This document shows positions 1,610-26,880 of a stretch of 33,442 nt of DNA, one piece after another. This DNA comes from Ylistrum balloti (taxonomy: Eukaryota): NCBI RefSeq assembly GCF_031769215.1, contig NW_026781947.1, forward strand, positions 62,001 to 95,442, read 5' to 3'. The notes under the pieces are model-generated. The model worked only from the letters and a program-made list of their open reading frames with translations. It was not told where the DNA came from and searched no databases. Position numbers and translations under genes: made by a program. Each line of letters opens with the position of its first letter. Positions within the stretch are counted from its first letter, which is position 1.

Positions 1610-4002
1610 TTAATTTGCGAAACGTTTGGTTTTAGAAATAAAATATTGTATACAACGGAAAACGTTTTCATTTTCATTGATAGTTAGATTTGGATCTCCG
1701 TACAAAAGCATGTCGAGTGTGTAATTTTCGGGCAAATTTAAAAAACATCCATTTCTTATGTCTGTATAATTAGAACAAAATAGAAGAAAATGTTCAGTAG
1801 TTTCGTGTGACTGTCTACAGGAGCAATAAGGACTATCGACAAGATTACGACTAAACAGGTGGGCATTTAAAGAACTGCAGGACATCCTTAACCTAGCGTG
1901 ATGAACCTGGTCAAGACGATTCCCAAAATTATAATAAGGAGGGACAGTACGGGAGTGTCTGTGTAGGTAGTTTTTCAGATTACTTATAGAGGGGTTATTT
2001 TTTACTAGTGGTGGTAGCGAGTTCCAAAGGTCGATAGAAGAAGGAAGAAAAGATTTCTTAAATAAATTAGTTTTACAAAATACATTACTCAGATTATCAG
2101 CATCACGTGTATTATATTGATGAGCGTCGGTTCTGCGCTGAGGAAGTAGTTGTGAGAGATATGGGGAGAGAGACCAAAAATCATTTTGTGTATTTGAACT
2201 GTTTTCTTAACATTGCGTCTATATTGTAGACTATCCCATCCAGTTTCCTCATAAAGCTTAGCATGACTAGTTAGTTTAGTCCCACCCGTCATAATTCTAG
2301 CAGCTTCAAGCTGAATATTCTCCAAAGACTGACATTGTTGAATAGTTAAGTTATCCCAGACCATATCGCCATATTCTAGAATAGGTCTGATAAATGAAAA
2401 ATACAAAGTTTGTAGAGAGTTTCTGTCTATTTTGAACTTAAATTTCCGTAAAACAGCGAGTTTATTAGAGGCTTTCTTTATCATAAAGTTAATATGTTCA
2501 GACCAAGTACCATCATGAGAGAAGAAGAGTCCTATATGTTTGTGATGTTTGACCTCATTAACAGGAACGTCATTCATAAGTAAAGGTGGGTGATGGGGCT
2601 TATTGAGTTTTCTACTAATCAGAAGAGATTCAGTTTTATCAGGGTTAAAAGTAACCAACCATTTTTCAGACCAGGCATATATTTTCCTTAAACTGTCATT
2701 CAGTAAGTCTGCACATTGAAGCGGAGTATCTACTATAGCATAAAGTGAAGTGTCGTCGGCAAATAGTTTTATTATTGCGTTAATGTCGTCAACTATGTCA
2801 TTTATAAAAATTAGAAACAGTAGAGGGCCTAGTATTGACCCCTGGGGAACACCAGCCCTTATTACTTTCCACTCAGAGGTTTTACAATTTATAACTACTC
2901 TTTGCTTTCTGTTATCTAAATAACTTCTAAACCACAAATGCAAACTCCCCCCAATGCCTATTTTATGTAATTTAAAAAGTAGCCCTGCATGCCATACTCT
3001 GTCGAAGGCTTTGCTGATATCACAAAAGACCATTCTAATTTCTTTACCTTTATCTAAAGCCGAATATATATCATTAGTAATGGCGAGTAATTGATTAATT
3101 GTAGAGTCACCAGCCCTGAATCCGGATTGGGAAGATGATAATAGAGAGTTCTCAATAATAAACTTATACAGATATTTATATACACATCTTTCCATTACCT
3201 TTCCGACAATAGATATTAATGATATAGGACGATAATTGTTGAGAAGAGAAGGGTTATCTTTTTTAAACACTGACGTAACATTAGCTAATTTCCAATTATT
3301 AGGAAAAGATGAAGTAGTTAAAGAGTTATTGAAGATTACTTGGAGGGGGTAACTCAAGATTATTGCTGCCTCCTTAAGGAGTCTAGGATTAATTAGGTCA
3401 GGTCCGACTGCCTTAGAGCAATCTAGATTTAATAGAACAGAAATAATGTCATTCCTATCTATATATATATGACTAAGAAGAGGTTCGTTGTTAGTAGTAG
3501 GTGGAAGTTCAGCATTAGTATCATCGACGGTAGAGTTGAGACAGAAGAATTCATTAAATGCATTTGCTTTATCAATGTCATCAGAAAAAATAGAAGTTTG
3601 TGTATGAATGGGTGGTATATTACAGGTTTTGTTGGTGTTAAGCATAAGTTTACCTACCGTTTTCCACCAAGACTTCCCACGTGTATTGTTACCCAGCATT
3701 CCACATAGTTTACGGACATATTTAGTTTTTGCATTACGTATTGTATTTACACATTTGTTCCTAATTTTTTTATACTTACACCAATCCTCTATGGTTCCTG
3801 ATCTCTTAGCTAATCTAAATAATCTTTTACGTTTCCGAGCTAACTTACGAATTTCACTGGTCATCCACGGAGGTTCTCTGCTACGTATAGTAACTACTTT
3901 GTTTGGAACACATTCCTTAGCGGTGTTAATGAGTATATCAGCAAAGCCATCGACAGAGGCATCTAAATCATCATATGTTAAAACAGTATCCCAATCAACC
4001 CC
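1610..4002 (-). pseudogene. LINE A ORF2 remnant: reverse transcriptase plus C-terminal CxC..E..H..C motif, no endonuclease, one frameshift at ~2161-2166
   Basis: RT motifs KAVGPD, NYRPISLIS, DISKAFDRVWH, GVPQGSILGPLLFLIFINDI and FADDTSL (2752-2763). Homology starts at GVDWDTVL (~4002), upstream of the track's Met. Shifting frame at the G4 run (2163-2166) gives an open read YLSQLLPQRR...SFLPSSIDLWNSLP...HARLRMSCSSLNAHL into the 1610-1885 ORF. Confidence 0.9.
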
Positions 4003-4800: not shown

Positions 4801-5960
4801 AGTATCGTCTTGTATTTGATTTAGTTTTAATGAATTATAAAATCATTTTTAATTCGGCAATTTTCGACGGAACACTGAACCCTGCTTCAAGTAGTCTTTC
4901 TATCCTATAGTTTCACACTTCAGAAATTGGCTAATGGTGTGTACGTAACAAACACATCACTTAAGATTTACCTGAATATATATTTCTGTTTACAAAAAGA
5001 CAGAAAAATGAGACTAATAAATAATCGAAAAAAATCCTTTCTGACGGTACGGGATTTTAAAAGAGACATCCATTTAATGTTTACCTATATCATGTCTATA
5101 TAATGCGTATCTATATATAAAGGCTAGTCACGTGTGGCACTTCGTAAACAAAACATTTCAAATTGCGAATTATATGTTATGTATGTAATCAACCTATTTT
5201 TTTTCTGAATTAGGAAATAATTATTGTATTCTTACATATTCAGAAAATAAATAAACCCGATCTCACACTTATCTATAGGTAATTTCCAAATTTATATAAA
5301 CCACGATAAAATCGCACATCTGTGCGATAGAACGGCAGAGCTTGCACACAAATGTGCGAAAGCTTATTTCGTTTTCTTTTTTTCCGCACATCCCTCATAG
5401 TGTAACGTTTTATGATTCCACAGCTGTACGTATTACTAATGGAACATGTTACACTTTGTTTTTACGACGGTGTTAAACACTGTTAATGATTTTTTTACTT
5501 TGCTTATATAAAAATGAGATTGTTCCCAATGCTCAAGGTCTCACAAAGATAACAACATTATTTTTTGATGTTTTATGGGTTACTTCTGTGGTGAAGTTTA
5601 CGCTTGCATACATGTCCCAGATTAATTTTATTCTTATTTTATCATGATTATGATTCCTTTCCCTATTCCATTAATCTCAGTTATTCCTCAATTAGTAAAA
5701 CCCTTTTTTACGATTTCCTAATAAACGATCTAGACGTATCACTAAAGGAACTGTTTATTCTCATTGGGTGCGGTTTAAATCTAAATCATATAACATCATA
5801 CATGTAGCTTGTAAATCTAATGTTTATGTTAGTAACGTCGTGATTTTAAATTGGTTCCATCATGGTTTGATACTGCTCATGTATGAAGGGTTTGTATAAA
5901 TATGGATCGAATAATTTTTCGTCCTAATCGACTGACGAGAATTGCTTTGTCTCTTTTCAG

Positions 5961-6469
5961 GTGCCTTATGCGGAGAATATTGCCATATCCCCACTTTGTT
6001 CTTCAAGATTATCTTCTGGCTCGGATACTGTAATTCTATGATAAACCCTATCATTTACGCTTGTTCGAGTCGTGAGTTCCAGAGAGCATTTCGTCGGATC
6101 TTGAGATGCAGAGTTCATAGAAACCCAAGGTTGTTTTACAAATCTAAGTCTAGGAGTACATCGATATCTGATTTGAACTCATCCCACCAACTGTCAGTGA
6201 AAAAATCACCAAATATTTTGTTTAGGTCTGAGTTTTCTCGGCATTCAATGAGGCCAATTTTCCATCCAAGCGTGGTGGTGGATAATGGACGACGAAATGA
6301 TTCACATCTTTACTCTAAAGAATTATATTCGGCGGAATCAGAAAACGGTAAATTATCACCCTGCATGAAGCATTTGAAAATCTGTGAGAGTTGTGATAGT
6401 GAAAACCTCTCTCTCAGTGACGACCAAATGGAGGCTTTAAAGGAGGAATGTCTGCAACATTTACGGTGA
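5961..6469 (+). CDS. ADRA1: Terminal coding exon of an alpha-1 adrenergic receptor-like class A aminergic GPCR (ECL3, TM7, helix 8, C-tail)
   Basis: Acceptor TTTGTCTCTTTTCAG|G at 5960/5961 (phase 1). Translation [32 protein letters not shown] has the NPxxY motif, the ADRA1-type YxCSSxEF helix-8 entry and a possible palmitoylated Cys. Stop TGA at 6467-6469. The upstream exon(s) with TM1-6 are not in the window. Confidence 0.85.
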
Positions 6470-8880: not shown

Positions 8881-10689
8881 CTACATGATACTTAGTCACT
8901 CAAGGAAAACTAATTCATAAAGACACACAAAGTGACTGCTGCAATAGTACTGACTCCAGTCAGTATTAGATTTACTACATAACATGGAAAGTCGTTCTAT
9001 TTTTCGGCAATACATAGAAAAACACTGATATCGTAATAGTGACGTTTATCAGTTGATGGTTGCTGTTGAATATCTCATCATATGATCATGCTCCCATCCG
9101 CACTCCTGACCGCTCATATTTGCTCCAGTAGATAGTTGCTGCCGCCTCCGTTTATGTAGTTGGTTAATCTTGTTAGTGGTTCCGAAAGGATCTCTGTTGT
9201 TGGCGAAACATCCAGGTGGAAATTCAACTATCAACACTTATATAGATTTTCCCTCATCATTCATTAAATATGACATAGAAAATAACTTCGTTACTGAAAT
9301 TATGATTATAGCCTAAGATAGGACAAAAGATCCTATGGATTCCAAACTAACTGTTGTATATCTTTACTCCACTATACACTTTCCGACAACTTATGGCTTC
9401 CATATTATTTCTACCACGGACACATTCTCACTTGTACACTCTTTCCATTGCAGTATTAGTTACACGTGTATGTGCAATGATACATATACAAGGTACCCAT
9501 AAGTGCAACAGCAGTTTATCACAAAACACTACTAGTAAATACCATCCTAAAATAAGCATGATACACAACACAAAAGATGCGCATGATTGAACCACACGAA
9601 TGACTGATTGCTTATATGTGTAACTTATCAAAATATGACAATAAAATAGCAAGATTGATCAAGAAAATTTACGAGGCATCTTTCACAGTGGGTAATCTAG
9701 TAAATATTTCGAGTGTATTTGGAATCGTTCACCTGATCACATACCCGTACGGTTGCCGAACAGTACGAAGACAAGTTATACATGTATCCGAGCTGGAAAA
9801 CAATTTTCTACACATGAAGATTTTCGTCCTTTTTATCAGATTCTCGTTCACCTGATGCGAAGCAAAAACGTTTTGTAAGTAGGCAAGGAGGATGTCGACG
9901 ACGATTTCCAAATGATAATAGACATTCAAAATAAGCAATTAAACTACAAAAACAAAAAGTGCTTCTGACACTATATAACTAAACACATTGGATTTTAATG
10001 ATATATTTTATGGACCCAGATTTACAATTGGACGATTGTATTAGAGAGAAGGGGGAGAACTCCCATAGCGCGGGGAAAAAATAGAGGCAGACGCGATTGT
10101 TCCAGGTCAAATTCACCACGAAGCTTAAAATGCATCCTGCATTTAATATTTATTTCTTTATATATAAAAAATTACAAATCTTTGATTCATTTTGACGATG
10201 ATCGTATAAAGGAGCGGGAAACACTCATTTTTAAAGAAAAAAACAATGTATTCTTTAAACATTTGATAAAGCATGGTGTTATAACATAAGTTCTTTAATA
10301 ATTAGGCAAATCTGGGATAGATATAGCACTGTTACTAATGCAAAACGATATTGTTGGCAGTAATGCAGTTAAGTACTACATATATACAGTTACAAGACAA
10401 CAATATATATAAAGCATTTCCATGTATGAAAATGGCTAACATCAAACTGGATACTAATAATTAATGTAATTACACACAAACCCTTTAGGAAGTAAACGAA
10501 CTATTTCATCAAATAATTTCTACTAGAGTTTGCTTTTGCTTGTTAGAAATATATGCTTTAAAATGTTGCATACTTATCAATAATTGACGGAAACCTTCAT
10601 TCTTACAATCAAAAACGAATTCATTTGGGTTAAACGTTTTTGTCGACACCAGCCATACGTTCAGATTAAGTAATGTCCCGTATTCAAAG

Positions 10690-11110
10690 TGAAAAGAATG
10701 GCTTTAACACTATCATATGATGTTCTTCATACTAACTTGCCAGAATTGAACATCAAAGATACGACATACCTTTCTTTATCAGCCGCTTATCTCGATCTTT
10801 TCCTACAACAAAACAAACATGGACAACTTTCCACAAAAGCTGTATAATAAGCCTTATAATAATTTCCTTATGATTAATTTTCCATTTCAGGATAGCAACA
10901 TCCCTGCATCCTCTAACTACGGTGTTTACATTTCGCAGTTGACTCGATATTCAACAGCCTGTTCGTCATAATTAGAAAATACATATTGTATTCTATTTTT
11001 GTGAAAGTGGACATTTTTGATGCTAGTTTACCTCAGATTACACCGATTAACCAATATTACATATTGTCGATGTTCTCCAGGATACTTACTCTTCTGGAAC
11101 ACCTTAATGT
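10690..11110 (+). mobile_element. Degraded Penelope-like element fragment (RT C-terminal part plus terminal-repeat remnant; probably Naiad-type)
   Basis: Translation PELNIKDTT..SAAYLDLFL...LSTK/LYNK..NF.MINFPF.DSNIPASSNYGVYISQLTRYSTACS (~10740-10970, one frameshift). It is followed by AGGATACTTACTCTTCTGGAACACC, which resembles the terminal repeat of such elements. Confidence 0.7.
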
Positions 11111-11515
11111 ATTCTAATTGTACTTTTCGACGCGTCTTTGTGTATATCTTTTAATTTATTGACCTAGTTCTATCGAATAGAAATTTTAATGACGATCCTG
11201 TTGCTATGTCCATCTTTTTTATCGTTGTGTGTGTCGCTTCTCTTTTTATGTGATTCAAATAGATTTACAAATTGTGTATATTGTATTAATGTATTATCAA
11301 TTGCAAGGCAGTGACGGTTGATCATTGACAGCATTATTAGTGGTGTATCACAGAGACAAGGATCCCGTTAAAGATTCAATGGCTTTGTTTATTATTATTG
11401 GCGATGCAATCGTATAACTTCATTCTCTTGGTCCAACGATTTCAAATTCAGACTTTGCAATAAAATAAAATTCTCTTTCTTTTTTTTCTCTCTTCCTTTA
11501 TCCGGATATTTTCTT

Positions 11516-12013
11516 TTATTCTTCACTGAAAAATGTGTCAAATCCTGTGATTGGATGTAGGCCATCATCAGCGTTCATCTCGAGACCTTTTTTTCCTTTC
11601 ATTTTATCTTGTTTTCCTTTCCTTTTATCTTGTTTTCCTTTCCTTTTATCTTGTTTTCCTTTCCTTTTATTTTGCTTTCCTGAAGAATGTTTTCCGGGAA
11701 TTTTCTTTTTCTTTTCATTAAAATCAATAGAATCAAATGTGTCAAATCCTGTGATTGGATGTAGGCCATCATCAGCGTTCATCTCGAGACCTTTTTTTCC
11801 TTTCCCTTTATCTTGCTTTCCTGAAGAATGTTTTCCGGGAATTTTCTTTTTCTTTTCATTGAAATCAATAGAATCAAATGTGTCAAATCCTGTGATTGGA
11901 TGTAGGCCTTCATCAGCGTTCATCTCGAGACCTTTATCTGGAGGATTATCAAAAAGGTGAGGACTGGCTGTTATAGAGACGACAAGAAATGCGAGGTTGA
12001 TATACGTTTTCAT
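11516..12013 (-). CDS. Putative secreted 165-aa repetitive protein or propeptide with alternating acidic and Lys-rich blocks; no recognised family
   Basis: ATG at 12013 lies 14 nt after the acceptor-like TTTCATTTTAG (exon start 12027). It has a signal-peptide-like N-terminus, MKTYINLAFLVVSITA. Three copies of KGLEMNAD(E/D)GLHPITGFDTF are spaced 141 and 204 nt apart, with 21-nt KRKGKQD sub-repeats; all lengths are multiples of 3. Stop TAA at 11516-11518; AATAAA on - at 11388-11393. Confidence 0.7.
   Translation of the reverse strand: MKTYINLAFLVVSITASPHLFDNPPDKGLEMNADEGLHPITGFDTFDSIDFNEKKKKIPGKHSSGKQDKGKGKKGLEMNADDGLHPITGFDTFDSIDFNEKKKKIPGKHSSGKQNKRKGKQDKRKGKQDKRKGKQDKMKGKKGLEMNADDGLHPITGFDTFFSEE
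11532..11935 (-). repeat. Coding tandem repeat: 141-nt unit; second unit expanded by 63 nt of 21-nt sub-repeats; third unit partial
   Basis: GTGTCAAATCCTGTGATTGGATGTAGGCC starts at 11535, 11739 and 11880. The sub-repeat CCTTTTATCTTGTTTTCCTTT recurs across ~11600-11680. Confidence 0.95.
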
Positions 12014-12612
12014 GATGACTTGATAACCTAAAATGAAACACGTTAGAAATTGCAGTCCAGTAAAGACGGGAAACTTTGTCATTTTGAGAGTACTTAACTG
12101 AAAAAAATTGTGAAAATATCGGATATCACTGCTACAAATGTACACACGTATTACTATTTAGTCTGTGAAGTAACTGGGACTTATAACAACTACAATGATT
12201 TTACATCACATATAACCTAAATCAAAGCAGTAGGAATTGTAGACAGAAATTTACAGGGCTTGTATAACAGCTATCTATTTAAAGCGACATCATAGGTTAA
12301 AAAACGTGTTTCCATAACAACAAGATACAGATTGATAGATTTTACAGAAAGGTTTACTCCTGTCATCATGACCATTTTTAGGCAAAATTGGATTTTAATT
12401 TGCGAACTGAAAGAAGATATACTGTCTATTAACTGCGCTTATTTTCACGTAATATGTGATTACTGAAGTTTTATTCGACATCTGCCGTTAATTAAGAGAA
12501 CTTTTAAAATTTTGATAAAAAAAAAAAAAAAATTCTTTGTCTTGCTATTGATTTTGAACAACAATGAATTAATCTCATGTCGATTTATACATGTTTGTGG
12601 TAACAAGAATGG

Positions 12613-12644
12613 TACATACATACATACATACATACATACATACA

Positions 12645-12674
<30 letters not shown>
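12613..12674. repeat. (TACA)n microsatellite, ~15 units
   Basis: Directly visible perfect tetranucleotide run. Confidence 0.97.
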
Positions 12675-13661: not shown

Positions 13662-13903
13662 ACCATCAAGCTGATATAGTCATCCCATCTGTTCATCATG
13701 TAATTAATGACGCGTGCTTGTTCCCATTTAATAGATAATTTGTAATCATGTTTTGTTTTAAAGTTTTAAACACCCAACACCTGGGATCACAATAATTCAC
13801 ACCATTTGAAATAAAAATTAAGTTGAGAAATGTTCTATTTTTTAATGCGATATGAAACTGGAAGTGTTTGGTGTTCGATAGTTTGCCTGTTGGTTCTTAA
13901 TAC

Positions 13904-14010
13904 CTTGCTCTTATTTGAGAACGTGACGTTACTTACACGGATTGACAAGATTTACCTGGCTAGTGTCGTCGATAAAACAGGACATGCTTCGTCTTCCGGA
14001 ACACATAATC
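13904..14010 (+). repeat. Degenerate Penelope-like terminal-repeat-derived dispersed repeat
   Basis: GGATTGACAAGATTTAC followed by CAGGACATGCTTCGTCTTCCGGAACAC, similar to CAGGATACTTACTCTTCTGGAACAC at ~11078-11102. Confidence 0.45.
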
Positions 14011-15055
14011 TTACATATATTTGTATTGTTTTAGGAGTCTCAGTGAATATATTTCTTTTGTTCATATTTTGCTCAAGTTTTATTAAATTTGAATTCGAAT
14101 CATGATAACATTGACATGTTGCTATTTTCTTGTAAGTTGTTTTGACATTGAGATAGAGGGGGAAAGGTGGTTATGTACAGACCGACTAAGTACATAACAC
14201 AATCTTCTTCGTGTAATTAATTGCATATTAGGAATATCAATATCATTTTTGCAAAGGAATCTCTGCGTTCTAGTTTAGTATCTTAATAGTTTCTACTGTC
14301 TTGTAATCAAGCACTTTTTACCAGACAATCACTCTCTTCTTGTTTTATTCTAAAAGTATATTTGGAGGTTATGAACACAAAAGGATACAGGTTATTGTAT
14401 CTCATTACGTTCATACCGTCATAAACGCAACATCTTTATTGTTGATATTTGTATTATTATAAAACTACGTTACCTGTTCAGTGGAGTAAATATGGTACGC
14501 TTGGTGGTAACGTTAACACAAGTCATATTTCCAATGACGGCTTCTATCATCTTAGAATGATTGCTAATATTATACAAAAGACACACAAATGAATATCATC
14601 TTTTCATAATGTTAAATGAGATACAAACAATAACAATAATAGTTGTGTAAATTAATTCATATTAATTCAATTTAATTAATATTTGATAACGAATACACCA
14701 GAAAACAATTTGTGTGGCGATTTTGTATAAATGAACCCACCCGCTTGCCCAACGTAATTATTGGTCACGTGATGGTGTAATGGACACACATACTTGAAAG
14801 AGCTCCCAGGTGAGGTGGGGTATTATTGTAATATTTAAGCAGAGTATTGACATGAAATCTACCAACAGTTGTCCATAAGCATTGTCATTGTTGTGCTTGA
14901 TGAACTTTTTCAACTATAATACGTGTATTTCTGCGTAATAGTGATTTACACTGTTCAACCTCCCTGGTTGTACACGTGAACTGTGTTACCTGTGGAACAC
15001 GTACATTCCTATACACGCCTATACTGCATGCCTAGTGTATACCATTTAGTATCGT

Positions 15056-15934
15056 ATGGCCGGCAAATTTTCAACGCCATCTACAATTTCCAAACGCAAA
15101 ATTGAGGAAAGTGTAAGCCCCGACTCATTAGTAGCAGGTGCCCCAGTGTCGAGTCGTAGGAGATCGTCCCTACCCGATTTGCCCAGCATGACCTCTACAA
15201 TTACTAATGAGAGTGATCCTATCAACCTAACTGAACTTATACATGCCTCGGTCACGTCACCTACATTTATAAGCGCGCTCGTCCCGAGCCTGGCTACTGC
15301 TCTTGGACCAGCTATCAGCCAACAAATTTCTTCTGCCATGGCCCCTTATACTGAACAAATCAAAACTCTAACTGATCAACTGAATACGGTGACCCAATGT
15401 AATCGCCAACTTACAAACAAAGTTCAGCAGTTGGAAACCACAGTTAAGCATCTGGAGTCCTCTTTAGAGGATCTTGAGCAGTATGGGCGCCGTACCAGCC
15501 TCCGGTTTCATGGCGTACCCTTACGGGAAAATGAAAAACAAACCACCGATGCGAAGGTCGTTGAGATTTGTAAACGTATTGATGTAAATATCTCTACCGA
15601 TGACATCAACAGATCTCACGTGATTGGTGACATACGTAATGGAAAGTCTCAAATCATATGTAGATTGCGCAACTGGAAAATCAAGAACAGTATATACCAG
15701 TCGCGTCTCAAATTAAAGAATCTCCAATCCGACCAGTTTCGTGTTTTTATAACTGAAGACCTGACATCATTCCGACAAAAGATCATCGCGGGTTTGTCAA
15801 AAGCCAAAAGAGAGAAGAAAATCCACTCATTTTGGACGAACGACGGTCGAGTATTCTACAGGGCTACATACAATTCCGCGAAAATCCTAGTGAAGCAGTA
15901 CGAGGATATATCTCACTTGACTTCCTCTAGTTGA
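15056..15934 (+). CDS. LINE B ORF1p (coiled coil plus L1-ORF1-like RRM/CTD)
   Basis: Heptad region (IKTLTDQLNTVTQCNRQLTNKVQQLETTVKHLESSLEDLEQYGRR) followed by LRFHGVP, IICRL, VFITEDLT and WTNDGRVF, typical of L1-type ORF1 in invertebrate CR1/L2-group LINEs. Confidence 0.85.
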   Translation: MAGKFSTPSTISKRKIEESVSPDSLVAGAPVSSRRRSSLPDLPSMTSTITNESDPINLTELIHASVTSPTFISALVPSLATALGPAISQQISSAMAPYTEQIKTLTDQLNTVTQCNRQLTNKVQQLETTVKHLESSLEDLEQYGRRTSLRFHGVPLRENEKQTTDAKVVEICKRIDVNISTDDINRSHVIGDIRNGKSQIICRLRNWKIKNSIYQSRLKLKNLQSDQFRVFITEDLTSFRQKIIAGLSKAKREKKIHSFWTNDGRVFYRATYNSAKILVKQYEDISHLTSSS

Positions 15935-16830: not shown

Positions 16831-17267
16831 ATAGTGTGGTATTATTAATACGAACTTATATTTATACATGTGTGATATTCATCGGATGGATATATACTTT
16901 GCGCATATGCGTTTTTCTAATGTAACCCATGTATATAGTTTTGCCTTTAGTATTACCAACTATTCCTTACGGATATCCAGTATATAAACATACAATTTTG
17001 TTATATGTCTTTACATACGTTAATATACCCAATACCTACCCCTCATTCCTCGGTATTCGACATGATACTTATCTGTTTCATTGTTATACCTTCCCTTTGC
17101 TGTCTACTATACTATAGCTTCATCTTTCCAATGGCGCATTGTCATCCTCCCTCTCCACAGTTATTCTCTTTTCTCGATTCCTCCCCAACCTTAGGATATG
17201 TCTGTGCACCCCTTTTTTCGTTGGTAGTCCTCCACCTATTTCTATTTTTTGTCAACTTCCAACCTCC

Positions 17268-20200
17268 ATGACAGGTAACGACGTGTGTGCATGGAGGGCT
17301 GCCATAGGTTGTTTTTATAGTAAATTATCGTGTATTTCAATCACCTTTGTTCTTAAAGTTAAAAATTGTTTATTTTTATTTCTAGCATTGCTCTCCAATC
17401 TAAATTGCCTCCATCGGATCTATCTTTTGCTTTTGCAGTTGTCCCATTGCATCCACAATCCTTATAATTCAGCTTTAATTGTTTTATTGATAGCGGGCGA
17501 TATTCATCCAAACCCCGGACCTAGTTCTAATAGTAGTTCATCTATCAGTGCTCTTAGTATATTACACCTAAACATTCGTAGCTTACGTAACAAATTAAAT
17601 TATATGTCCTCACTAGTAGACGATGTTGATATTTTAGCCATTACTGAAACACATCTCGACAACTCTGTACCAAACTCCGACATCATAATTGATGGTTTCT
17701 CTGAACCATTCCGGAAAGATAGGAATATGTTTGGTGGTGGAGTTGCCATGTATTTTTCTGAATCCCTTATCGCCAAGCGTAGAACTGATCTTGAATTTGG
17801 AAACTCTGAAATGATATGGTCACAAGTCAAACTCCAAAATTTTCTTTATTTAATATGTAATATTTACAGACCTCCCTCATCCAACGCCAATGTCTTATGG
17901 CAGCATCTTCGACATTCAGTTGATATAGCACTCGAAGAAACACCAAACGTAATAATTACAGGTGATTTAAATATCGATTTTTTGAAAAATGATAGAGTTG
18001 ATCTAAGTAATATTCTTTCCCAATATAATCTAACAAATGTTATTACCGAACCAACCAGACGTACTGATACTTCTTCTACACTCCTTGACCCCATTATTGT
18101 TAGTGATACTGTAGATGTAGTTTTCTCTGATGTGATCGAAATTGAGCGAGCAATTAGTGACCATGATGCTGCTTTCGTCGTCATTAATATTCCTGTAACA
18201 ATTAAACACAACTTCAGAAGAAAAGTATGGCTGTACAATCAATCCAATGTGGACGAACTTAAAAATATGATCAATAGTATTCCGTGGCTAGAAAATTTCA
18301 CCCATATGTTAAACGTTAACGAAATGTGTAATTATTTCACCGAGAAATTCTTAAATGCTGTAAATACGTGTATACCCTCGAGAGAAGTATTAGTGCGTGA
18401 TGGTGACAAGCCCTGGATGAATGGTCTGCTAAGACGCAATATCAGAAAAAGGGATAGACTTAAAAGAATAATGTTTAATAATAGTACTGAGCGTAATAAA
18501 AATAATTATAAGTACATGAGAAACAGAGTAAACAATATGATTAAAAGAGCCAAGGAATTATTTTATGAAAATGTAAATACGGTGATTGACAAAAGTAATA
18601 GCAATCCCAAAACGTATTGGAAACTTCTACGAAGTATTCTTAAGGGCAAAACAAATATTGAAATTTCCCCCCTACTAGACTCTTTTACAAACGAAATTTT
18701 ATATGACAATGACAGTAAATGTGAATTGTTGAATAACTATTTTAGTTCTGTATGTAATCTATCAGAAAATGACATAGACAAAGATTTACCTTTTTTTGAA
18801 CGGCGCACCAACTCCGTTTTATCTGAAATCCATATAGCTCCTGGTGAAGTTGAAGATATTATAAATATTCTTAATTTAAATAAAGCAACAGGTCCTGATG
18901 GTATAAGTCATAAAATGCTCAAACTTGTAGCCAATGAAGTTTCTGTACCACTGTCTATTATATTTAATCGATCACTATCTTCCTCTGTATTTCCTGATTT
19001 GTGGAAAATTGCCCACGTAATGCCCGTATTTAAAGCTAACGATCCAAGTGTCACTTCTAATTATAGACCAATTTCACTCATAAGTTGTATAGGTAAACTG
19101 TTTGAACGTGTGATATATAAGCACATCTACAATTTTTTGATTGAAAATGATCTTATTTACAAGTATCAGTCAGGATTCCTACCTAATCATTCCACAACTC
19201 ATCAACTAATTGAGTTATATCACTCTATAATTACCTCCTTAGAAAAATTTGAACATTCTATTTTAATTTTTTGTGACTTTTCCAAGGCGTTTGACAGAGT
19301 CTGGCACAAAGGCCTTATATTTAAACTAAACAACTACGGTATTTCTGGATCACTTCTCCGATGGATAACCAGCTATTTGTCTAACAGAAAGCAGGCCGTC
19401 TTTATTAAGGATTCATTATCCTCGTTCAAGACTATTAATGCTGGCGTCCCTCAAGGTTCTGTACTAGGCCCTCTCTTCTTCTTAATATATATAAACGATA
19501 TTTCACATAATCTTTCTTCTTTATCTAGACTTTTTGCTGATGACACTTCCCTCTCATATTCATCACAAGACTTAATCTATATTGAAAATGTAGCCAAATC
19601 TGATTTGAGGAAACTTGAAATTTGGTCCAAAGATTGGCTTATGTCCTTCAACCCTAAAAAAACTGAAGCAATGATTATCTCTAATCGGCAACTTCCTTTT
19701 ATCCCATCCCTTACCTTTGATAACACCCCAATTCAAATTACAAATCAACACAAACACCTCGGAGTTATTCTTTCTAACGATGGTAAATGGAATGCCCATA
19801 TTCAGTATATTCTAAGCAAAGTAACCAAATATGTAGCAACCCTCCGAAAGCTTAAACTTATTTTAAATAGAAATAATTTGGAAAAGTTGTATCTTACCTA
19901 TATCCGTCCCTTACTTGAATATTCATGTGAGCTATGGGACAACTGCGGTGTAGTAAATTCTTTAATTCTGGAAAATATCCAACTAGAAGCTGCAAGAATA
20001 GTCACAGGGCTGCCCATATACACAAAAATAGATTTTTTATATCAAGAAACTGGATGGGTTCCTCTTTCCAAAAGACGAGAAGCTCGAAAACTTGCTCTAT
20101 TTTTCACTATTATTAATAACACAGCACCGAATTTTCTAATAGACTTATTGCCAAATACTGTAGGAAATGCTACTCCTTATAATCTACGTAACAACCATCT

Positions 20201-20702
20201 ACTCAGAGAACAGCCTCTTCGTTTACAACTATCACAACTTTCTTTTTTTCCTTCTACATCAAAACTTTGGAACGATTTAAATGTTACTATCAGAAATTCT
20301 CCATCCCTTAACTCATTCAAGAATAATGTTAAAAAATCCATACTAATAGATACTAATATCTGTAAAACTTTTGTAAACCATGGTCCTAGGAAACTAAGTA
20401 TTCTTCATTGTAGACTCAGAAATCGAGCAAGTCCCCTAAATTATGACCTTTTTAGAGCCAATTTACTAGCTAGTGCTGAGTGCCGTTGTGGGCATCCCTG
20501 TGAAGATTCCTATCACTTCTTTCTAATCTGTCCTGTTTATGCCAATCTGCGTCGATCTCTATTAACAGAACTAGCATGGTTTGAAGGTAATATTACAATA
20601 GATCTTCTATGCAAAGGTGACCCGAATATATCTGATGTTAACAATGCAAAAATTGCAAAGGCTGCACAGCATTTCCTCAACAGGTCGGGTAGGTTCGACT
20701 GA
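17268..20702 (+). CDS. LINE B ORF2p: hydrophobic N-peptide, 2A-like motif, APE endonuclease, reverse transcriptase, C-terminal Cys/His motif
   Basis: First in-frame ATG at 17268 (the track starts at TTG 17139). EN motifs ILHLNIRS (17559), ITETHL, GGGV, NIYRPP, TGDLN and SDH (18156). RT motifs KATGPDG, NYRPISL, DFSKAFDRVWH, GVPQGSVLGP and FADD (19533-19544). C-terminal CRCGHPCEDSYHFFLIC (20481-20531). No internal stops. Confidence 0.95.
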   Translation: MTGNDVCAWRAAIGCFYSKLSCISITFVLKVKNCLFLFLALLSNLNCLHRIYLLLLQLSHCIHNPYNSALIVLLIAGDIHPNPGPSSNSSSSISALSILHLNIRSLRNKLNYMSSLVDDVDILAITETHLDNSVPNSDIIIDGFSEPFRKDRNMFGGGVAMYFSESLIAKRRTDLEFGNSEMIWSQVKLQNFLYLICNIYRPPSSNANVLWQHLRHSVDIALEETPNVIITGDLNIDFLKNDRVDLSNILSQYNLTNVITEPTRRTDTSSTLLDPIIVSDTVDVVFSDVIEIERAISDHDAAFVVINIPVTIKHNFRRKVWLYNQSNVDELKNMINSIPWLENFTHMLNVNEMCNYFTEKFLNAVNTCIPSREVLVRDGDKPWMNGLLRRNIRKRDRLKRIMFNNSTERNKNNYKYMRNRVNNMIKRAKELFYENVNTVIDKSNSNPKTYWKLLRSILKGKTNIEISPLLDSFTNEILYDNDSKCELLNNYFSSVCNLSENDIDKDLPFFERRTNSVLSEIHIAPGEVEDIINILNLNKATGPDGISHKMLKLVANEVSVPLSIIFNRSLSSSVFPDLWKIAHVMPVFKANDPSVTSNYRPISLISCIGKLFERVIYKHIYNFLIENDLIYKYQSGFLPNHSTTHQLIELYHSIITSLEKFEHSILIFCDFSKAFDRVWHKGLIFKLNNYGISGSLLRWITSYLSNRKQAVFIKDSLSSFKTINAGVPQGSVLGPLFFLIYINDISHNLSSLSRLFADDTSLSYSSQDLIYIENVAKSDLRKLEIWSKDWLMSFNPKKTEAMIISNRQLPFIPSLTFDNTPIQITNQHKHLGVILSNDGKWNAHIQYILSKVTKYVATLRKLKLILNRNNLEKLYLTYIRPLLEYSCELWDNCGVVNSLILENIQLEAARIVTGLPIYTKIDFLYQETGWVPLSKRREARKLALFFTIINNTAPNFLIDLLPNTVGNATPYNLRNNHLLREQPLRLQLSQLSFFPSTSKLWNDLNVTIRNSPSLNSFKNNVKKSILIDTNICKTFVNHGPRKLSILHCRLRNRASPLNYDLFRANLLASAECRCGHPCEDSYHFFLICPVYANLRRSLLTELAWFEGNITIDLLCKGDPNISDVNNAKIAKAAQHFLNRSGRFD

Positions 20703-21039: not shown

Positions 21040-22400
21040 TATAGTAGGATTTCCCAAAAAACGCGTTAAACGCGCATTTCTATTGGGGTCCTTAAAATGG
21101 ATTTACAAATACATTTCCCTCAATAATATACATAACAACTATCATGATTCTCTTGCGTTTTGTTTTGAAAGTTACGTTTCACTTGGATTTTGAACTTAAG
21201 CTTGTTTGATGTACTTTTAATATAACCTGGAAGAAAATTCCATTCTTTTGCGCCGGTAAAATAGAAAGTTGTAGATTCTTTACCTTGTACTGATGGGAAA
21301 ATGAAATTATATGCTGATTACAGGGTATTTTGAAGACATGGATTCTTGTTAAATTATACATGTAGTTTGGAGCCTTTTCATGGAAAACATGAAACATATG
21401 ATTCATTCTGATTAGTACAATAGTACAATGAAATGATATATTTTTTCTATCGCGTACGTACGCGATAATAAAAGGAAAAAATATCTTTCCCTATCGCGTC
21501 CCCACGCGGTAGCTATTGCACGCGATAACTATATGTACGAAAGTTATCGCGTTTATACGCGATATTTATTGCATGGGTACGCGATAGCTACCGCGTGGGT
21601 ACGCGATAGGAAAAGATATTTTTCCTTTTACTAAAGCGTGTTTTTCAAGTACTTTCGTAGATTTAACAAATCCTATAATTAATGTCTAGCATGTTTGTAC
21701 GCAAAAATAACTGCATTTTATACTGTGCCTATTTTGAACATTCAAAATAAATCTTATTACTGTACTTTGTTTTCTGCTACCTGTAATTTATTTTTCAAAA
21801 TATTTTTTCACAACCCTTCATACCAACCAGCACAGGAATAGTCGAAATGATAAAAAATCAATGCCGCGCAAAGCGTTTTTCTCGACTTATACGATAGACA
21901 TTGCTCATTTCTGTAGAGAAATTTTAGTCGATGATTTACTTTTTTAACAGTTGAATCTATTTTTTCTTCACCTGATAGCAAATCGTTAACGTCTATAAAA
22001 AGATATTTTATACACTTCATAGCTTAAATGTCGTGATTATTTCACTATTTTGAATTTCATATTTGTAGCTTTATCCAGATTTCTTTTGGGGCCAGAAATA
22101 ATACTTTCTGTTTTATCTAAATGTAGAGAGAGCTTGTTATACATTAAACGTTCTTGACAAGATTCCAACACCAAAGACATTTTTTGCGATATTACTGCTA
22201 GGTTTAGATGGGAAAGTATAGCAGAATCGTCTGCATACAACATCAACATGCAGTTAGAATCAATGCTGACTTGCATATCATTGACATATATCAAGAACAG
22301 AAGAGGACCTAACAAACTCCCCTGAGGTACCCCATATTTTATGTTACATGACCCCTGCGCAGTGACCTTTTGATTTGATCTGTGAAAAATGCGTATTAAG
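21040..22400 (-). mobile_element. Old, 5'-truncated, degraded L2/Crack-like LINE fragment, tail-to-tail with LINE B and interrupted at 21415-21659
   Basis: Fragments GVPQGSLLGPLLFLIYVNDM, LYADDSAIL, NKLSLHLDKTES, KKVNHRLKFLYR..RKTLCAALI..HFDYSC..WY, KLQVAENK, MNHMFH..KAPNY and TFYFTGAKEWNFLP, with a stop at 21120-21122. There are several frameshifts. Confidence 0.8.
21415..21659. mobile_element. MITE-like nested inverted-repeat insertion rich in TATCGCGT/ACGCGATA
   Basis: ~47-bp inverted arms at 21469-21516 and 21584-21630, an inner hairpin at 21520-21552 and a palindrome at 21448-21467. Imperfect terminal IRs TACAATAGTAC / GTACTTTCGTA. It interrupts the RT reading frame of the surrounding LINE fossil. 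Confidence 0.65.
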
Positions 22401-22625
22401 GCCATTACAAAAATAAGTTCATCTTGTACAACTTAATATCTTGTATGTACGTGTACTATTTTTGTTTTACTTACAAATTATTATCATGCAGGTATAAATT
22501 ATTATTGTGTACGTTCAACATATGATACCTAGACGGATCCGTTAGGGGAAGAATTTGCAACATGACCAACTTGAACGGGTTCTGTTCTTTATTTTCCAGT
22601 ATTTTTTTCACTAACTTAATCGGAT

Positions 22626-26590: not shown

Positions 26591-26612
26591 TACCCGAAAT
26601 TAGCGACATATA

Positions 26613-26880
26613 GATATCGTCTTTCGCGTTACAGATGTCGTCTTTCGCGTTACAAATGTCGTCTTTCGCGTTACAGATGTCGTCTTTCCGCGTTACAGAT
26701 GTCGTCTTTCGCGTTACAGATGTCGTCTTTCGCGTTACAAATGTCGTCTTTCGCGTTACAGATGTCGTCTTTCCGCGTTACAGATGTCGTCTTTCCGCGT
26801 TACAGATGTCGTCATTCGCGTTACAAATGTCGTCTTTCGCGTTACAGATGTCGTCTTTCGCGTTACAAATGTCGTCTTTC
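26613..26880. repeat. 21-bp minisatellite, 12 full copies plus a partial
   Basis: Unit TCGTCTTTCGCGTTACA(G/A)ATG. GCGTTAC at 26626, 26647, 26668, 26690, 26711, 26732, 26753, 26775, 26797, 26818, 26839 and 26860. Three units have an extra C. Confidence 0.97.

What the first reader, a model, noticed from the sequence alone, without database searches (positions are those of the whole stretch)
11516..12013. Orphan secreted protein of alternating acidic and lysine-rich blocks, possibly a new propeptide or biomaterial protein
Seen: a 165-aa ORF with a signal-like N-terminus (likely cleavage near ITA|SP), no Cys, and a 47-aa unit. The unit has a 26-aa acidic/aromatic block (GLEMNADDGLHPITGFDTFDSIDFNE, 7 D/E) and a 21-aa block with 10 Lys. 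The second unit gained three 7-aa KRKGKQD-type inserts. Every repeat length is a multiple of 3 and the copies are nearly identical, suggesting a recent expansion that kept the frame. The acidic blocks are bounded by K/KK and KKKK. Inference: (a) convertase cleavage could release three near-identical acidic peptides, and the internal FDSID loosely recalls pedal-peptide/orcokinin motifs; or (b) the intact protein is a block polyampholyte of the kind used in shell matrix, adhesive or mucus coacervates. I do not recognise it as any described family.
Basis: partly seen in the sequence, partly recalled or inferred. Interest (0 to 1): 0.75.

Follow-up and report, generated by a model that had tools for sequence, protein, structure and literature searches.

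The report
Orphan secreted charge-block repeat ORF
A single-copy, unannotated open reading frame in a probable scallop genome would encode a secreted, disordered protein of alternating acidic and lysine-rich blocks. It has no relative in any protein database searched, but it shares its splice site, start codon and signal peptide with one other small acidic-protein gene in the same genome; whether it is expressed could not be tested.

Summary
A 165-codon minus-strand ORF (12013 to 11516) has a signal-like N-terminus, no Cys, and three near-identical acidic blocks separated by Lys-rich spacers. All repeat lengths are multiples of three.

It is single-copy DNA, not a transposon or satellite. It has no Pfam match, no hit among 1.84 billion protein representatives, and no exact entry in the 15-billion-protein collection.

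New here: one other locus in the genome (contig C190, L003) shares a sharply bounded 80-nt block. The block covers a splice acceptor, a short 5'UTR, the ATG and the signal peptide, and is followed by a 73-aa hyper-acidic ORF. A 1-nt indel between acceptor and ATG marks that stretch as UTR. This makes a real two-member secreted-protein gene family plausible.

Points against a working gene:
- No RNA run holds the locus.
- Codon usage is indeterminate.
- The Lys spacers are 83% purine minisatellite.
- One sampled individual carries a premature stop, and three carry K2E in the signal peptide.
- Tandem arrays nearby also give long open frames.

The pedal-peptide/orcokinin link is not supported. The function is inferred only: either an intact charge-block matrix protein or an acidic-peptide precursor. 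The scan noted a different hidden multi-copy peptide-precursor gene elsewhere in this genome (s1-258770), not this sequence.

The parts
12028..12043 (-). Pyrimidine tract and AG of a putative splice acceptor (AG at 12029-12028), conserved in the paralogue L003
   Evidence: Alignment. The segment -30..0 relative to the ATG scores z=6.8 against shuffles, while segments further upstream score z<1.6.
12014..12027 (-). 14-nt 5'UTR part of the coding exon, with A at -3 of the ATG
   Evidence: L003 has 15 nt here. This 1-nt indel would break a reading frame, so the stretch is non-coding and the ATG at 12013 is the start.
11966..12013 (-). ATG and 16-codon signal peptide, with inferred cleavage after ITA
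   Evidence: Translation. BLASTP against L003 gives 12/17 identities, E=2e-6. DNA 0..+51 scores z=18.8. It passes a crude signal-peptide rule that 5 of 102 local ATG-ORFs pass. No SignalP run was possible.
11933..11965 (-). Unique 11-aa lead (SPHLFDNPPDK) before the first acidic block
11792..11932 (-). Repeat unit 1: 26-aa acidic/aromatic block plus 21-aa Lys-rich block (47 codons)
   Evidence: It differs from unit 2 by 1 synonymous and 3 non-synonymous codon changes.
11588..11791 (-). Repeat unit 2: the same 47-aa unit expanded by three extra 21-nt (7-aa) repeats. The heptad array is roughly 11588-11671 and the Lys-spacer DNA is 83% purine.
   Evidence: TRF 21-nt period, 4.5 copies. Three of the heptad copies are identical at DNA level.
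11519..11587 (-). Repeat unit 3: truncated acidic block (23 codons) ending FFSEE
   Evidence: A 12-nt deletion relative to units 1 and 2 removes DSID.
11516..11518 (-). TAA stop, at a position where units 1 and 2 have a Lys codon
   Evidence: Sequence. Degenerate unit homology continues to 11498 (D5).
11515..11520 (-). AATAAA overlapping the stop codon (candidate polyadenylation signal). A second AATAAA lies at 11388-11393.
   Evidence: Read directly from the sequence. Use of either signal is not shown.
11977..12038 (-). Block shared with the paralogous locus G000:C190:935320-935382 (86% identity)
   Evidence: Exact and degenerate signal-peptide patterns find only these two loci in 648.5 Mb, with 0 control matches.

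Best explanation
This is most likely a real but unannotated, lineage-restricted gene. Its last exon starts at the acceptor at 12028-12029 and holds the whole coding sequence, from the ATG at 12013 to the TAA at 11516, with AATAAA overlapping the stop. The product would be a secreted, cysteine-free, largely disordered protein of about 149 residues.

Shown:
- It is one of two paralogues. The other is on contig C190 (L003:1527-1745:+), a 73-aa hyper-acidic secreted ORF. The two keep the acceptor, a short 5'UTR, the start codon and the signal peptide, and are otherwise unalignable.
- The body was built very recently by in-frame tandem duplication of a 141-nt unit, and by slippage of a 21-nt purine-rich repeat.

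Inferred:
- The protein acts intact outside the cell as a block polyampholyte.
- The Asp/Phe-rich blocks (net about -7 each) bind cations, mineral or basic partners.
- The Lys blocks (net about +9 or more) bind polyanions or the acidic blocks of neighbouring molecules, giving electrostatic self-association in a secreted matrix, mucus or shell/byssus-type material.
For: - ORF, units and frame-preserving repeats.
- Single copy in the 648.5-Mb genome, with single-copy read depth, so not a transposon or satellite.
- The paralogue shares a sharply bounded block from -30 to +51 around the ATG (z=6.8 and 18.8), while all flanks and the mature part score z<1.6.
- Only these two loci match the signal-peptide pattern, and the reversed control pattern matches none.
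- A 1-nt indel lies between acceptor and ATG, against no indel in the 51 coding bases.
- Both loci have A at -3, then an acidic ORF, then a stop with AATAAA 0-80 nt downstream.
- The paralogue's synonymous codon usage is coding-like (+0.11 bits per codon, above the 95th percentile of 246 random open frames).
- Charge blockiness exceeds all but 15 of 2000 shuffles.
- The AF2 model is mostly low-confidence (mean pLDDT 53), in keeping with disorder.
- The paralogue's mature part has no Lys or Arg at all, so the family's shared product is an acidic polypeptide, not a convertase-cut peptide.
- Acidic proteins (MSP-1, Aspein, Asprich) and basic Lys-rich proteins (KRMP, shematrin) are both known shell-matrix classes in pteriomorph bivalves: PMC8217771.
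Against: - No transcript evidence. None of the 5 runs that hold the locus is RNA, and all laid data are genomic contigs.
- No protein database holds it or any relative, although other follow-up notes of this scan (unchecked here) describe homologues in other molluscs and scallops for other genes of this genome.
- Synonymous codon usage of the non-redundant ORF (-0.035 bits per codon) lies between random frames (-0.059 +/- 0.078) and real coding pieces (+0.069 +/- 0.096), so it decides nothing.
- The Lys spacers are 83% purine with AAA:AAG = 25:6, the composition of a minisatellite.
- Differences between units are 1 synonymous to 3 non-synonymous.
- Among four sampled genomes there is a premature stop (G157*, run X3) and a K2E change in the signal peptide n-region (three runs). 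SNP density in the ORF is similar to that in the flanks.
- Tandem arrays elsewhere on this contig also give long open frames.
- No tissue, proteome or material data link it to any matrix.
Confidence: 0.4

Rival explanations
1. It is a non-functional or not-yet-functional ORF. A short duplicate of the 5' end of the C190 gene (acceptor, start, signal peptide) lies next to unrelated DNA. In that DNA a purine-rich minisatellite and a 141-nt duplication happen to stay open. It may be untranscribed, or transcribed without a selected protein product (a proto-gene).
For: - No RNA holder.
- Absent from all protein collections.
- Codon usage indeterminate and nearer to random frames.
- AAA-dominated spacer that is 83% purine.
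- The opposite strand is also open, and other arrays give long ORFs.
- A nonsense allele and a K2E allele are segregating.
- No excess of synonymous change between units.
- The mature part has no significant similarity to the paralogue.
Against: - The shared block ends sharply at functional borders (acceptor to end of signal peptide). It does not decay gradually as a neutral duplicate would.
- About 130 non-redundant codons are open in DNA of about 34% G+C. My estimate, using about 0.075 stops per codon, is roughly 0.2 such frames expected per 33-kb window.
- Every repeat length and the 12-nt deletion keep the frame.
- The stop is followed at once by AATAAA.
- The nonsense allele removes only the last 9 residues.
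Confidence: 0.33
2. It is a multi-copy peptide precursor. After signal-peptide removal, prohormone convertases cut at the KK, KKKK and KR sites and carboxypeptidase trims the basic residues. This would release three near-identical acidic peptides of 23-37 residues as hormones, neuropeptides or pheromones. The Lys-rich spacers would be discarded.
For: - A signal peptide followed by repeated near-identical blocks, each flanked by basic residues. Unit 2's spacer also has three KR pairs.
- The language-model feature search placed it nearest a multi-peptide precursor family (apidaecin), but at a score of 0.77 and recognition of 1297, both below the tool's own usable levels.
- Another hidden multi-copy peptide precursor was noted elsewhere in this genome (s1-258770, unchecked).
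Against: - Spacers of 21-42 residues are far longer than usual. Most flanks are Lys-Lys, not Lys-Arg or Arg-Arg.
- The first block is preceded by a single Lys only.
- There is no Gly amidation signal.
- The paralogue's mature part has no basic residue at all, so it cannot be convertase-processed.
- No similarity to PP/OK or any other precursor. The F-D-x-I-D match to orcokinin (NFDEIDRSGFGFN, PMC5656890) lies at the C-terminal end of the block, without the following G-F..F part.
- No neural expression data.
Confidence: 0.2
3. The Lys-rich blocks are the products (cationic host-defence-type peptides) and the acidic blocks are neutralising pro-pieces, as in apidaecin-type multipeptide precursors.
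For: The architecture alternates anionic and cationic segments. The nearest language-model cluster is apidaecin precursors, at a weak score of 0.77.
Against: - The Pfam apidaecin family (PF00807, the family named) is not among the Pfam matches.
- The Lys blocks are wholly hydrophilic (K, G, Q, D, S), with no amphipathic or Pro-rich character. They contain Asp, and they are the fast-slipping purine minisatellite part, while the acidic blocks are the ordinary-complexity part.
Confidence: 0.04

Closest known systems
Repetitive low-complexity shell-matrix proteins of pteriomorph bivalves: acidic MSP-1, Aspein and Asprich; basic Lys-rich KRMP and shematrin (PMC8217771)
   Same: A signal peptide followed by biased, repetitive, disordered sequence. 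The family is lineage-restricted and evolves fast. Acidic domains and Lys-rich basic domains are both recognised functional classes in shell matrices.
   Different: No sequence similarity (0 hits). The whole mature protein is not acidic (D+E 17%, K+R 22%, net about +7), unlike the >20% D+E and pI<3.5 class. Acidic and basic blocks alternate within one small chain. No mantle expression or shell-proteome evidence.
Pedal peptide/orcokinin-type neuropeptide precursors (PLDSVYGTHGMSGFA; NFDEIDRSGFGFN; PMC5656890)
   Same: A signal peptide and several copies of an acidic, Phe/Asp-containing peptide between basic residues. It has an F-D-x-I-D motif.
   Different: The blocks are 26 aa, not 13-15. The motif lies at the C-terminal end, with no following G-F..F. 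The flanks are KK/KKKK with long Lys-rich spacers, not KR. No detectable homology.
Secreted-peptide gene families with a conserved signal sequence and hypervariable mature part (for example conopeptide superfamilies; from general knowledge, not tested here)
   Same: The two paralogues keep the splice site, 5'UTR and signal peptide at 86% DNA identity, while the mature parts are unalignable.
   Different: Only two members. No Cys framework. Mature parts are acidic and disordered, not folded toxins. No expression data.
Apidaecin-type multipeptide precursors (PF00807)
   Same: Tandem units of oppositely charged segments behind one signal peptide. This is the nearest cluster by language-model features.
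   Different: The score of 0.77 is below the usable range. PF00807 is not among the Pfam matches. No Pro-rich peptide and no processing motifs of that family.

Membership tests
Pedal peptide/orcokinin-type precursor | Detectable sequence homology to PP/OK precursors | tested here: not met
   phmmer against 1.84 billion representatives gives 0 hits at E<=0.001. Pfam at E<=10 gives only two chance-level, unrelated families.
Pedal peptide/orcokinin-type precursor | Copies of a 13-15-aa peptide with an N-terminal x-F/L-D-x-I/V motif and a C-terminal G-F/L..F part (prototypes in PMC5656890) | tested here: not met
   By inspection, F-D-S-I-D lies at residues 19-23 of a 26-aa block, and G-F precedes it instead of following it (prototypes).
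Pedal peptide/orcokinin-type precursor | Peptide copies separated by dibasic KR/RR cleavage sites | tested here: inconclusive
   The flanks are DK, KK and KKKK. KR occurs only inside the spacer of unit 2. No cleavage predictor or peptidome was available.
Generic secreted multi-copy peptide precursor | N-terminal signal peptide | tested here: met
   It passes a crude n/h/c-region rule that 5 of 102 local ORFs pass, and it is conserved in the paralogue. SignalP was not available.
Generic secreted multi-copy peptide precursor | Expression in neurons or endocrine cells and detection of the processed peptides | not testable with these tools
   No RNA run holds the locus. The single reads call showed only genomic contigs.
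Acidic shell-matrix proteins (MSP-1, Aspein, Asprich class) | Asp+Glu above 20% and very low pI across the mature protein (PMC8217771) | tested here: not met
   The mature protein has D+E 17.4%, K+R 22.1% and net charge about +7. Only the 26-aa blocks are acidic. The paralogue L003 would meet this criterion.
Acidic shell-matrix proteins (MSP-1, Aspein, Asprich class) | Presence in the shell proteome or mantle-specific expression | not testable with these tools
   No expression or proteome data were reachable.
Apidaecin precursors (PF00807) | Match to the Pfam model | tested here: not met
   PF00807 is not among the matches. The ESM feature score is 0.77, below the usable level.
Transposable element or satellite-borne ORF | Multiple dispersed or arrayed copies in the genome | tested here: not met
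   Protein and DNA searches of the 648.5-Mb genome find only this locus plus the 62-nt paralogous block. Depth over 11223-12491 is single-copy level, against hundreds to thousands for flanking repeats.
Two-member signal-peptide family with G000:C190 locus (L003) | Significant similarity of acceptor, 5'UTR and signal peptide | tested here: met
   86% identity over 62 nt, E=4.7e-10. BLASTP gives 12/17, E=2e-6. z=6.8 and 18.8.
Two-member signal-peptide family with G000:C190 locus (L003) | Homology of the mature parts | tested here: not met
   The co-linear GLE and ITG matches give a local score of 25, equal to the shuffle mean (2619 of 5000 shuffles reach it). DNA +51..+220 scores z<0.5.

The most novel reading that the evidence does not exclude
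This could be a gene caught shortly after birth. A duplicated splice-acceptor, start and signal-peptide module from an older acidic-peptide gene became joined to new sequence. In-frame duplication and purine-minisatellite slippage then built that sequence, within the life of the species, into a secreted block polyampholyte, or into a three-copy acidic-peptide precursor founding a new signalling-peptide family. It may still be polymorphic for start-region and stop variants.
Probability: 0.2. Interest if true: 0.55.

Novelty: new member of a known kind. Interest (0 to 1): 0.3.

Why it matters
If it is expressed, it adds a small, cleanly structured example to the many lineage-restricted secreted repeat proteins of bivalves. 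In this example the steps of origin can still be read: capture of a signal-peptide module, a 141-nt in-frame duplication, and 21-nt slippage. Its strict alternation of about -7 and +9 blocks would also make it a simple natural model for charge-patterned self-association. It further shows that current annotations and protein collections miss short single-exon secreted ORFs in this genome, since neither paralogue is in any collection. If it is not expressed, it is only a repeat-derived open frame.

Tried and rejected
- **Transposon or satellite origin:** rejected. The locus is single-copy.
- **Exon of a larger coding sequence:** disfavoured. The paralogue has a 1-nt indel between acceptor and ATG, and the upstream in-frame ATG at 12082 lies outside the conserved block.
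- **Opposite-strand ORF 11535-11960:** has no ATG and is simply the complement of the repeats.
- **Homology of the mature part to the paralogue (GLE...ITG):** not above shuffles.
- **More family members:** exact and degenerate signal-peptide patterns, DNA searches from both loci, and protein searches find only the two loci.
- **Shared upstream exon:** blastn of the window against 20 kb around L003 finds only transposon fragments and a microsatellite.
- **Route to other scallops by synteny:** the only conserved neighbour is the terminal exon of a rhodopsin-type GPCR (5942-6469). Its upstream exons were not found in 50 kb, and a 175-aa piece cannot retrieve full-length orthologues, so this route was abandoned.
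- **Expression:** the one run search returned only DNA-like runs, and the one reads call showed genomic contigs that break at the repeats. Neither transcripts nor repeat copy number could be read.
- **Other searches that gave nothing:** ESM Atlas (weak or none), AF2 single-sequence model (low confidence), metagenome scan, literature search for the peptide strings, Rfam.
- **Codon-usage test against HSP70 genes of this genome:** low power and indeterminate for this ORF.

Full report
**1. The observation**

The minus strand of the window carries an open frame from 12145 to 11516. From the ATG at 12013 it encodes 165 residues plus TAA. The N-terminus reads MKTYINLAFLVVSITA|SP. It has one Lys, a nine-residue uncharged hydrophobic core, and small residues at -3 and -1.

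The rest has no Cys or Trp and is dominated by Lys (31), Gly (19) and Asp (18).

The units are:
- Unit 1, codons 28-74: a 26-aa acidic/aromatic block plus a 21-aa block with ten Lys.
- Unit 2, codons 75-142: the same, plus three further 7-aa repeats.
- Unit 3, codons 143-165: truncated.

Tandem Repeats Finder reports a 141-nt period (96% matches, no indels) and a 21-nt period of 4.5 copies. The repeat finder places the acidic-block copies 204 and 141 nt apart.

Three things should be added:
- Unit 3 continues in degenerate form beyond the stop (11498-11531, 76-79%). The TAA replaces a Lys codon of the unit, and a 12-nt deletion removed DSID.
- AATAAA overlaps the stop (11520-11515).
- The opposite strand is also open across the repeats. 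Unrelated tandem arrays on the same contig and near the paralogue give open frames of hundreds of codons in several frames. ORF length in repeated DNA of this genome therefore proves little.

**2. What it is not**

It is not a transposon or satellite.
- A six-frame protein search and a DNA search of the 648.5-Mb assembly find no second copy of the body.
- Depth in four genomic data sets is at single-copy level over 11223-12491, against hundreds to thousands over the flanking repeats at 10800-10940, 13761-14183 and 14466-14606.

It belongs to no described family.
- Pfam gives only two chance-level matches.
- The word-indexed search of 5.8 billion clusters gives nothing.
- The exhaustive phmmer search of 1.84 billion representatives gives zero hits at E<=0.001.
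- The exact sequence, with either candidate start, is not in the 15-billion-protein collection.
- A metagenome scan with the first 53 residues is empty.
- The peptide strings occur in no paper of the library.
- The language-model search gives only a weak lead to apidaecin-type multipeptide precursors (score 0.77, recognition below the useful level).
- Rfam finds no RNA family in the window.

**3. The new evidence: a paralogue of the gene's 5' end**

The DNA search of the genome found one other match: G000:C190:935320-935382, 86% identical to window 11977-12038 (reciprocal). That locus (L003) has a 73-codon ORF (L003:1527-1745:+). It begins MKTYILLAFLVV and continues as a hyper-acidic sequence with no Lys or Arg after the signal peptide. 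A stop follows, with an AATAAA about 75 nt downstream.

The alignment shows the same pyrimidine tract and AG directly upstream (tttcattt[t/c]ag|gtta) and A at -3 of both ATGs.

Segment-wise alignment against shuffles shows that similarity is confined to -30..0 (z=6.8) and 0..+51 (z=18.8). Segments further upstream, and everything after codon 17, score z<1.6.

BLASTP sees only the signal peptide (12/17, E=2e-6). The co-linear GLE and ITG tripeptides that catch the eye in the mature parts are no better than shuffles.

Between acceptor and ATG the two loci differ by a 1-nt indel (14 against 15 nt), while the 51 coding bases have none. That stretch is therefore untranslated, and the ATG at 12013 is the start. 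This argues against the ORF being an internal exon of a larger coding sequence.

Exact and degenerate patterns for the signal peptide find only these two loci, and the reversed control pattern finds none. Apart from transposon fragments and a microsatellite, 20 kb around L003 shares nothing else with the window.

A block that begins at a splice acceptor, ends at the end of a signal peptide, and lies between unalignable flanks is what selection on a gene start would leave. It is not what neutral decay of a duplicate would leave. This is the main reason I rate a real gene as somewhat more likely than not.

**4. Evidence against a working gene**

- No sequencing run on record as RNA holds the locus. 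The five holders are genomic, from two studies.
- The single reads call showed contigs that break at the repeats, so neither splicing nor repeat copy number could be read.
- Those contigs reveal several variants (effects computed):
  - 12010 T>C = K2E in the signal peptide, in three of four runs.
  - Two synonymous changes, at 11798 and 11696.
  - 11545 C>A = G157stop in run X3, contiguous with unique flank, which removes the last nine residues.
- Variant density in the covered ORF (4 in about 420 nt) is like that of the flanks.
- Differences between units 1 and 2 are one synonymous and three non-synonymous.
- The Lys spacers are 83% purine, with AAA:AAG 25:6. They are a slipping purine minisatellite.
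- Synonymous codon usage was scored against 3,624 codons of this genome's HSP70 genes:
  - Non-redundant ORF: -0.035 bits per codon.
  - 246 random open frames: -0.059 +/- 0.078.
  - Real coding pieces: +0.069 +/- 0.096.
  - Bona fide GPCR exon next door: +0.004.
  - Paralogue: +0.112, above the 95th percentile of random frames.

  The test has little power and decides nothing for this ORF, but it favours the paralogue as coding.
- A crude signal-peptide rule passes 5 of 102 ATG-ORFs of 60 residues or more in 103 kb of local DNA. Two of the five are these two loci. A signal-like start is uncommon by chance, but not rare.

**5. Context**

The ORF lies in transposon-rich DNA.
- Reverse-transcriptase ORFs lie at 2089-3864 (-) and 22037-22405 (-).
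- A LINE has a coiled-coil ORF1 (15056-15934) and an endonuclease-RT ORF2 (17139-20702).
- The only other host gene piece is the terminal exon of a rhodopsin-type GPCR at 5942-6469 (+), on the other strand and 5 kb away. The ORF is therefore intergenic.
- Notes by other agents of this scan call the genome a scallop. I did not test that.

**6. How it most likely works**

Shown:
- The architecture, the recent in-frame expansion, the paralogous gene start, and the strong charge segregation. Acidic blocks carry about -7 and Lys blocks +9 or more. A kappa-like index is 0.30 against about 0.18 for shuffles, and 15 of 2000 shuffles reach the observed value.
- Prediction of little fixed structure. Mean pLDDT is 53, and the only helix lies in the heptad Lys repeats.

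Inferred: secretion and function.

I favour action as an intact extracellular polyampholyte, for these reasons:
- The paralogue's mature part has no basic residue and so cannot be a convertase substrate. The family's common product is then an acidic polypeptide.
- The spacers are long, Lys-Lys-type and evolving by slippage, unlike processing linkers.
- Pteriomorph bivalves are known to secrete both acidic and Lys-rich low-complexity matrix proteins (PMC8217771).

The precursor reading remains possible, because blocks are flanked by KK/KKKK and there are KR pairs in unit 2. The specific pedal-peptide/orcokinin link fails. The prototypes (PMC5656890) are 13-15-mers with the motif at the N-terminus and a G-F..F tail. 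No homology is detectable.

**7. Verdict**

I put a real, lineage-restricted secreted-protein gene at roughly 0.6 overall, split between an intact polyampholyte (0.4) and a peptide precursor (0.2). I put a non-functional repeat-derived frame at about one third.

It is a new member of a known kind, the taxonomically restricted secreted repeat proteins of molluscs. It has a nicely legible origin but no functional evidence, so interest is modest. The decisive step, transcript evidence, could not be run with the calls available.

Noticed in passing
L003:1527-1748 (G000:C190:935346-935567, + strand): An unannotated 73-codon ORF for a signal peptide plus a 56-aa hyper-acidic tail with no Lys or Arg. 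It has no Pfam, word-search or Atlas match. Its codon usage is coding-like, and AATAAA lies about 75 nt after the stop. It is the only paralogue of the finding's 5' end.
   Followed up: partly
window 5942-6469 (+): Terminal exon of a rhodopsin-type GPCR (TM7 with NPIIY, aminergic-looking WLGYCNS motif, long C-tail). The upstream exons were not found within 50 kb.
   Followed up: partly
window 15056-15934 and 17139-20702 (+): An apparently intact LINE: a coiled-coil ORF1 and a 1187-aa ORF2 with endonuclease and reverse-transcriptase domains. Further RT fragments lie at 2089-3864 (-) and 22037-22405 (-).
   Followed up: partly
window 13761-14183, 14466-14606, 10800-10940: Very high-copy short repeats. 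Summed contig depth is about 8000x, 2700x and 800x, against about 12-20x for unique DNA. The many 'joints' between 11085-11105 and 14033-14054 show these belong to one dispersed family.
   Followed up: no
window 10689-10971 (+) and L012:1096-1395: Fragments of the same widespread repeat-borne protein (motifs ...LEIKD...HGQLSTK... and ...FPF.DS.IPAS..YGVY...) occur near both paralogous loci. This is a transposon family, not synteny.
   Followed up: no
L017:1-4200 (G000:C90:22001-26200): A large satellite whose three forward frames are all open for 130-614 codons (YLVCRFVPSIWCVGLSPVFG-type units). It is a useful caution that tandem arrays in this genome mimic long ORFs.
   Followed up: no
window 26612-26880: A 21-nt / 85-nt nested tandem array (12.7 copies, 94%) that gives short repetitive ORFs.
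   Followed up: no
window 12613-12674 and 12517-12532: A (TACA)15 microsatellite and an A16 run about 500-650 nt upstream of the ORF. Genomic contigs of all four runs break there.
   Followed up: no
G000:C235:616000-668500: A tandem cluster of at least nine near-identical intronless HSP70 genes (same score, about 5-7 kb apart), seen while building a codon-usage reference.
   Followed up: no
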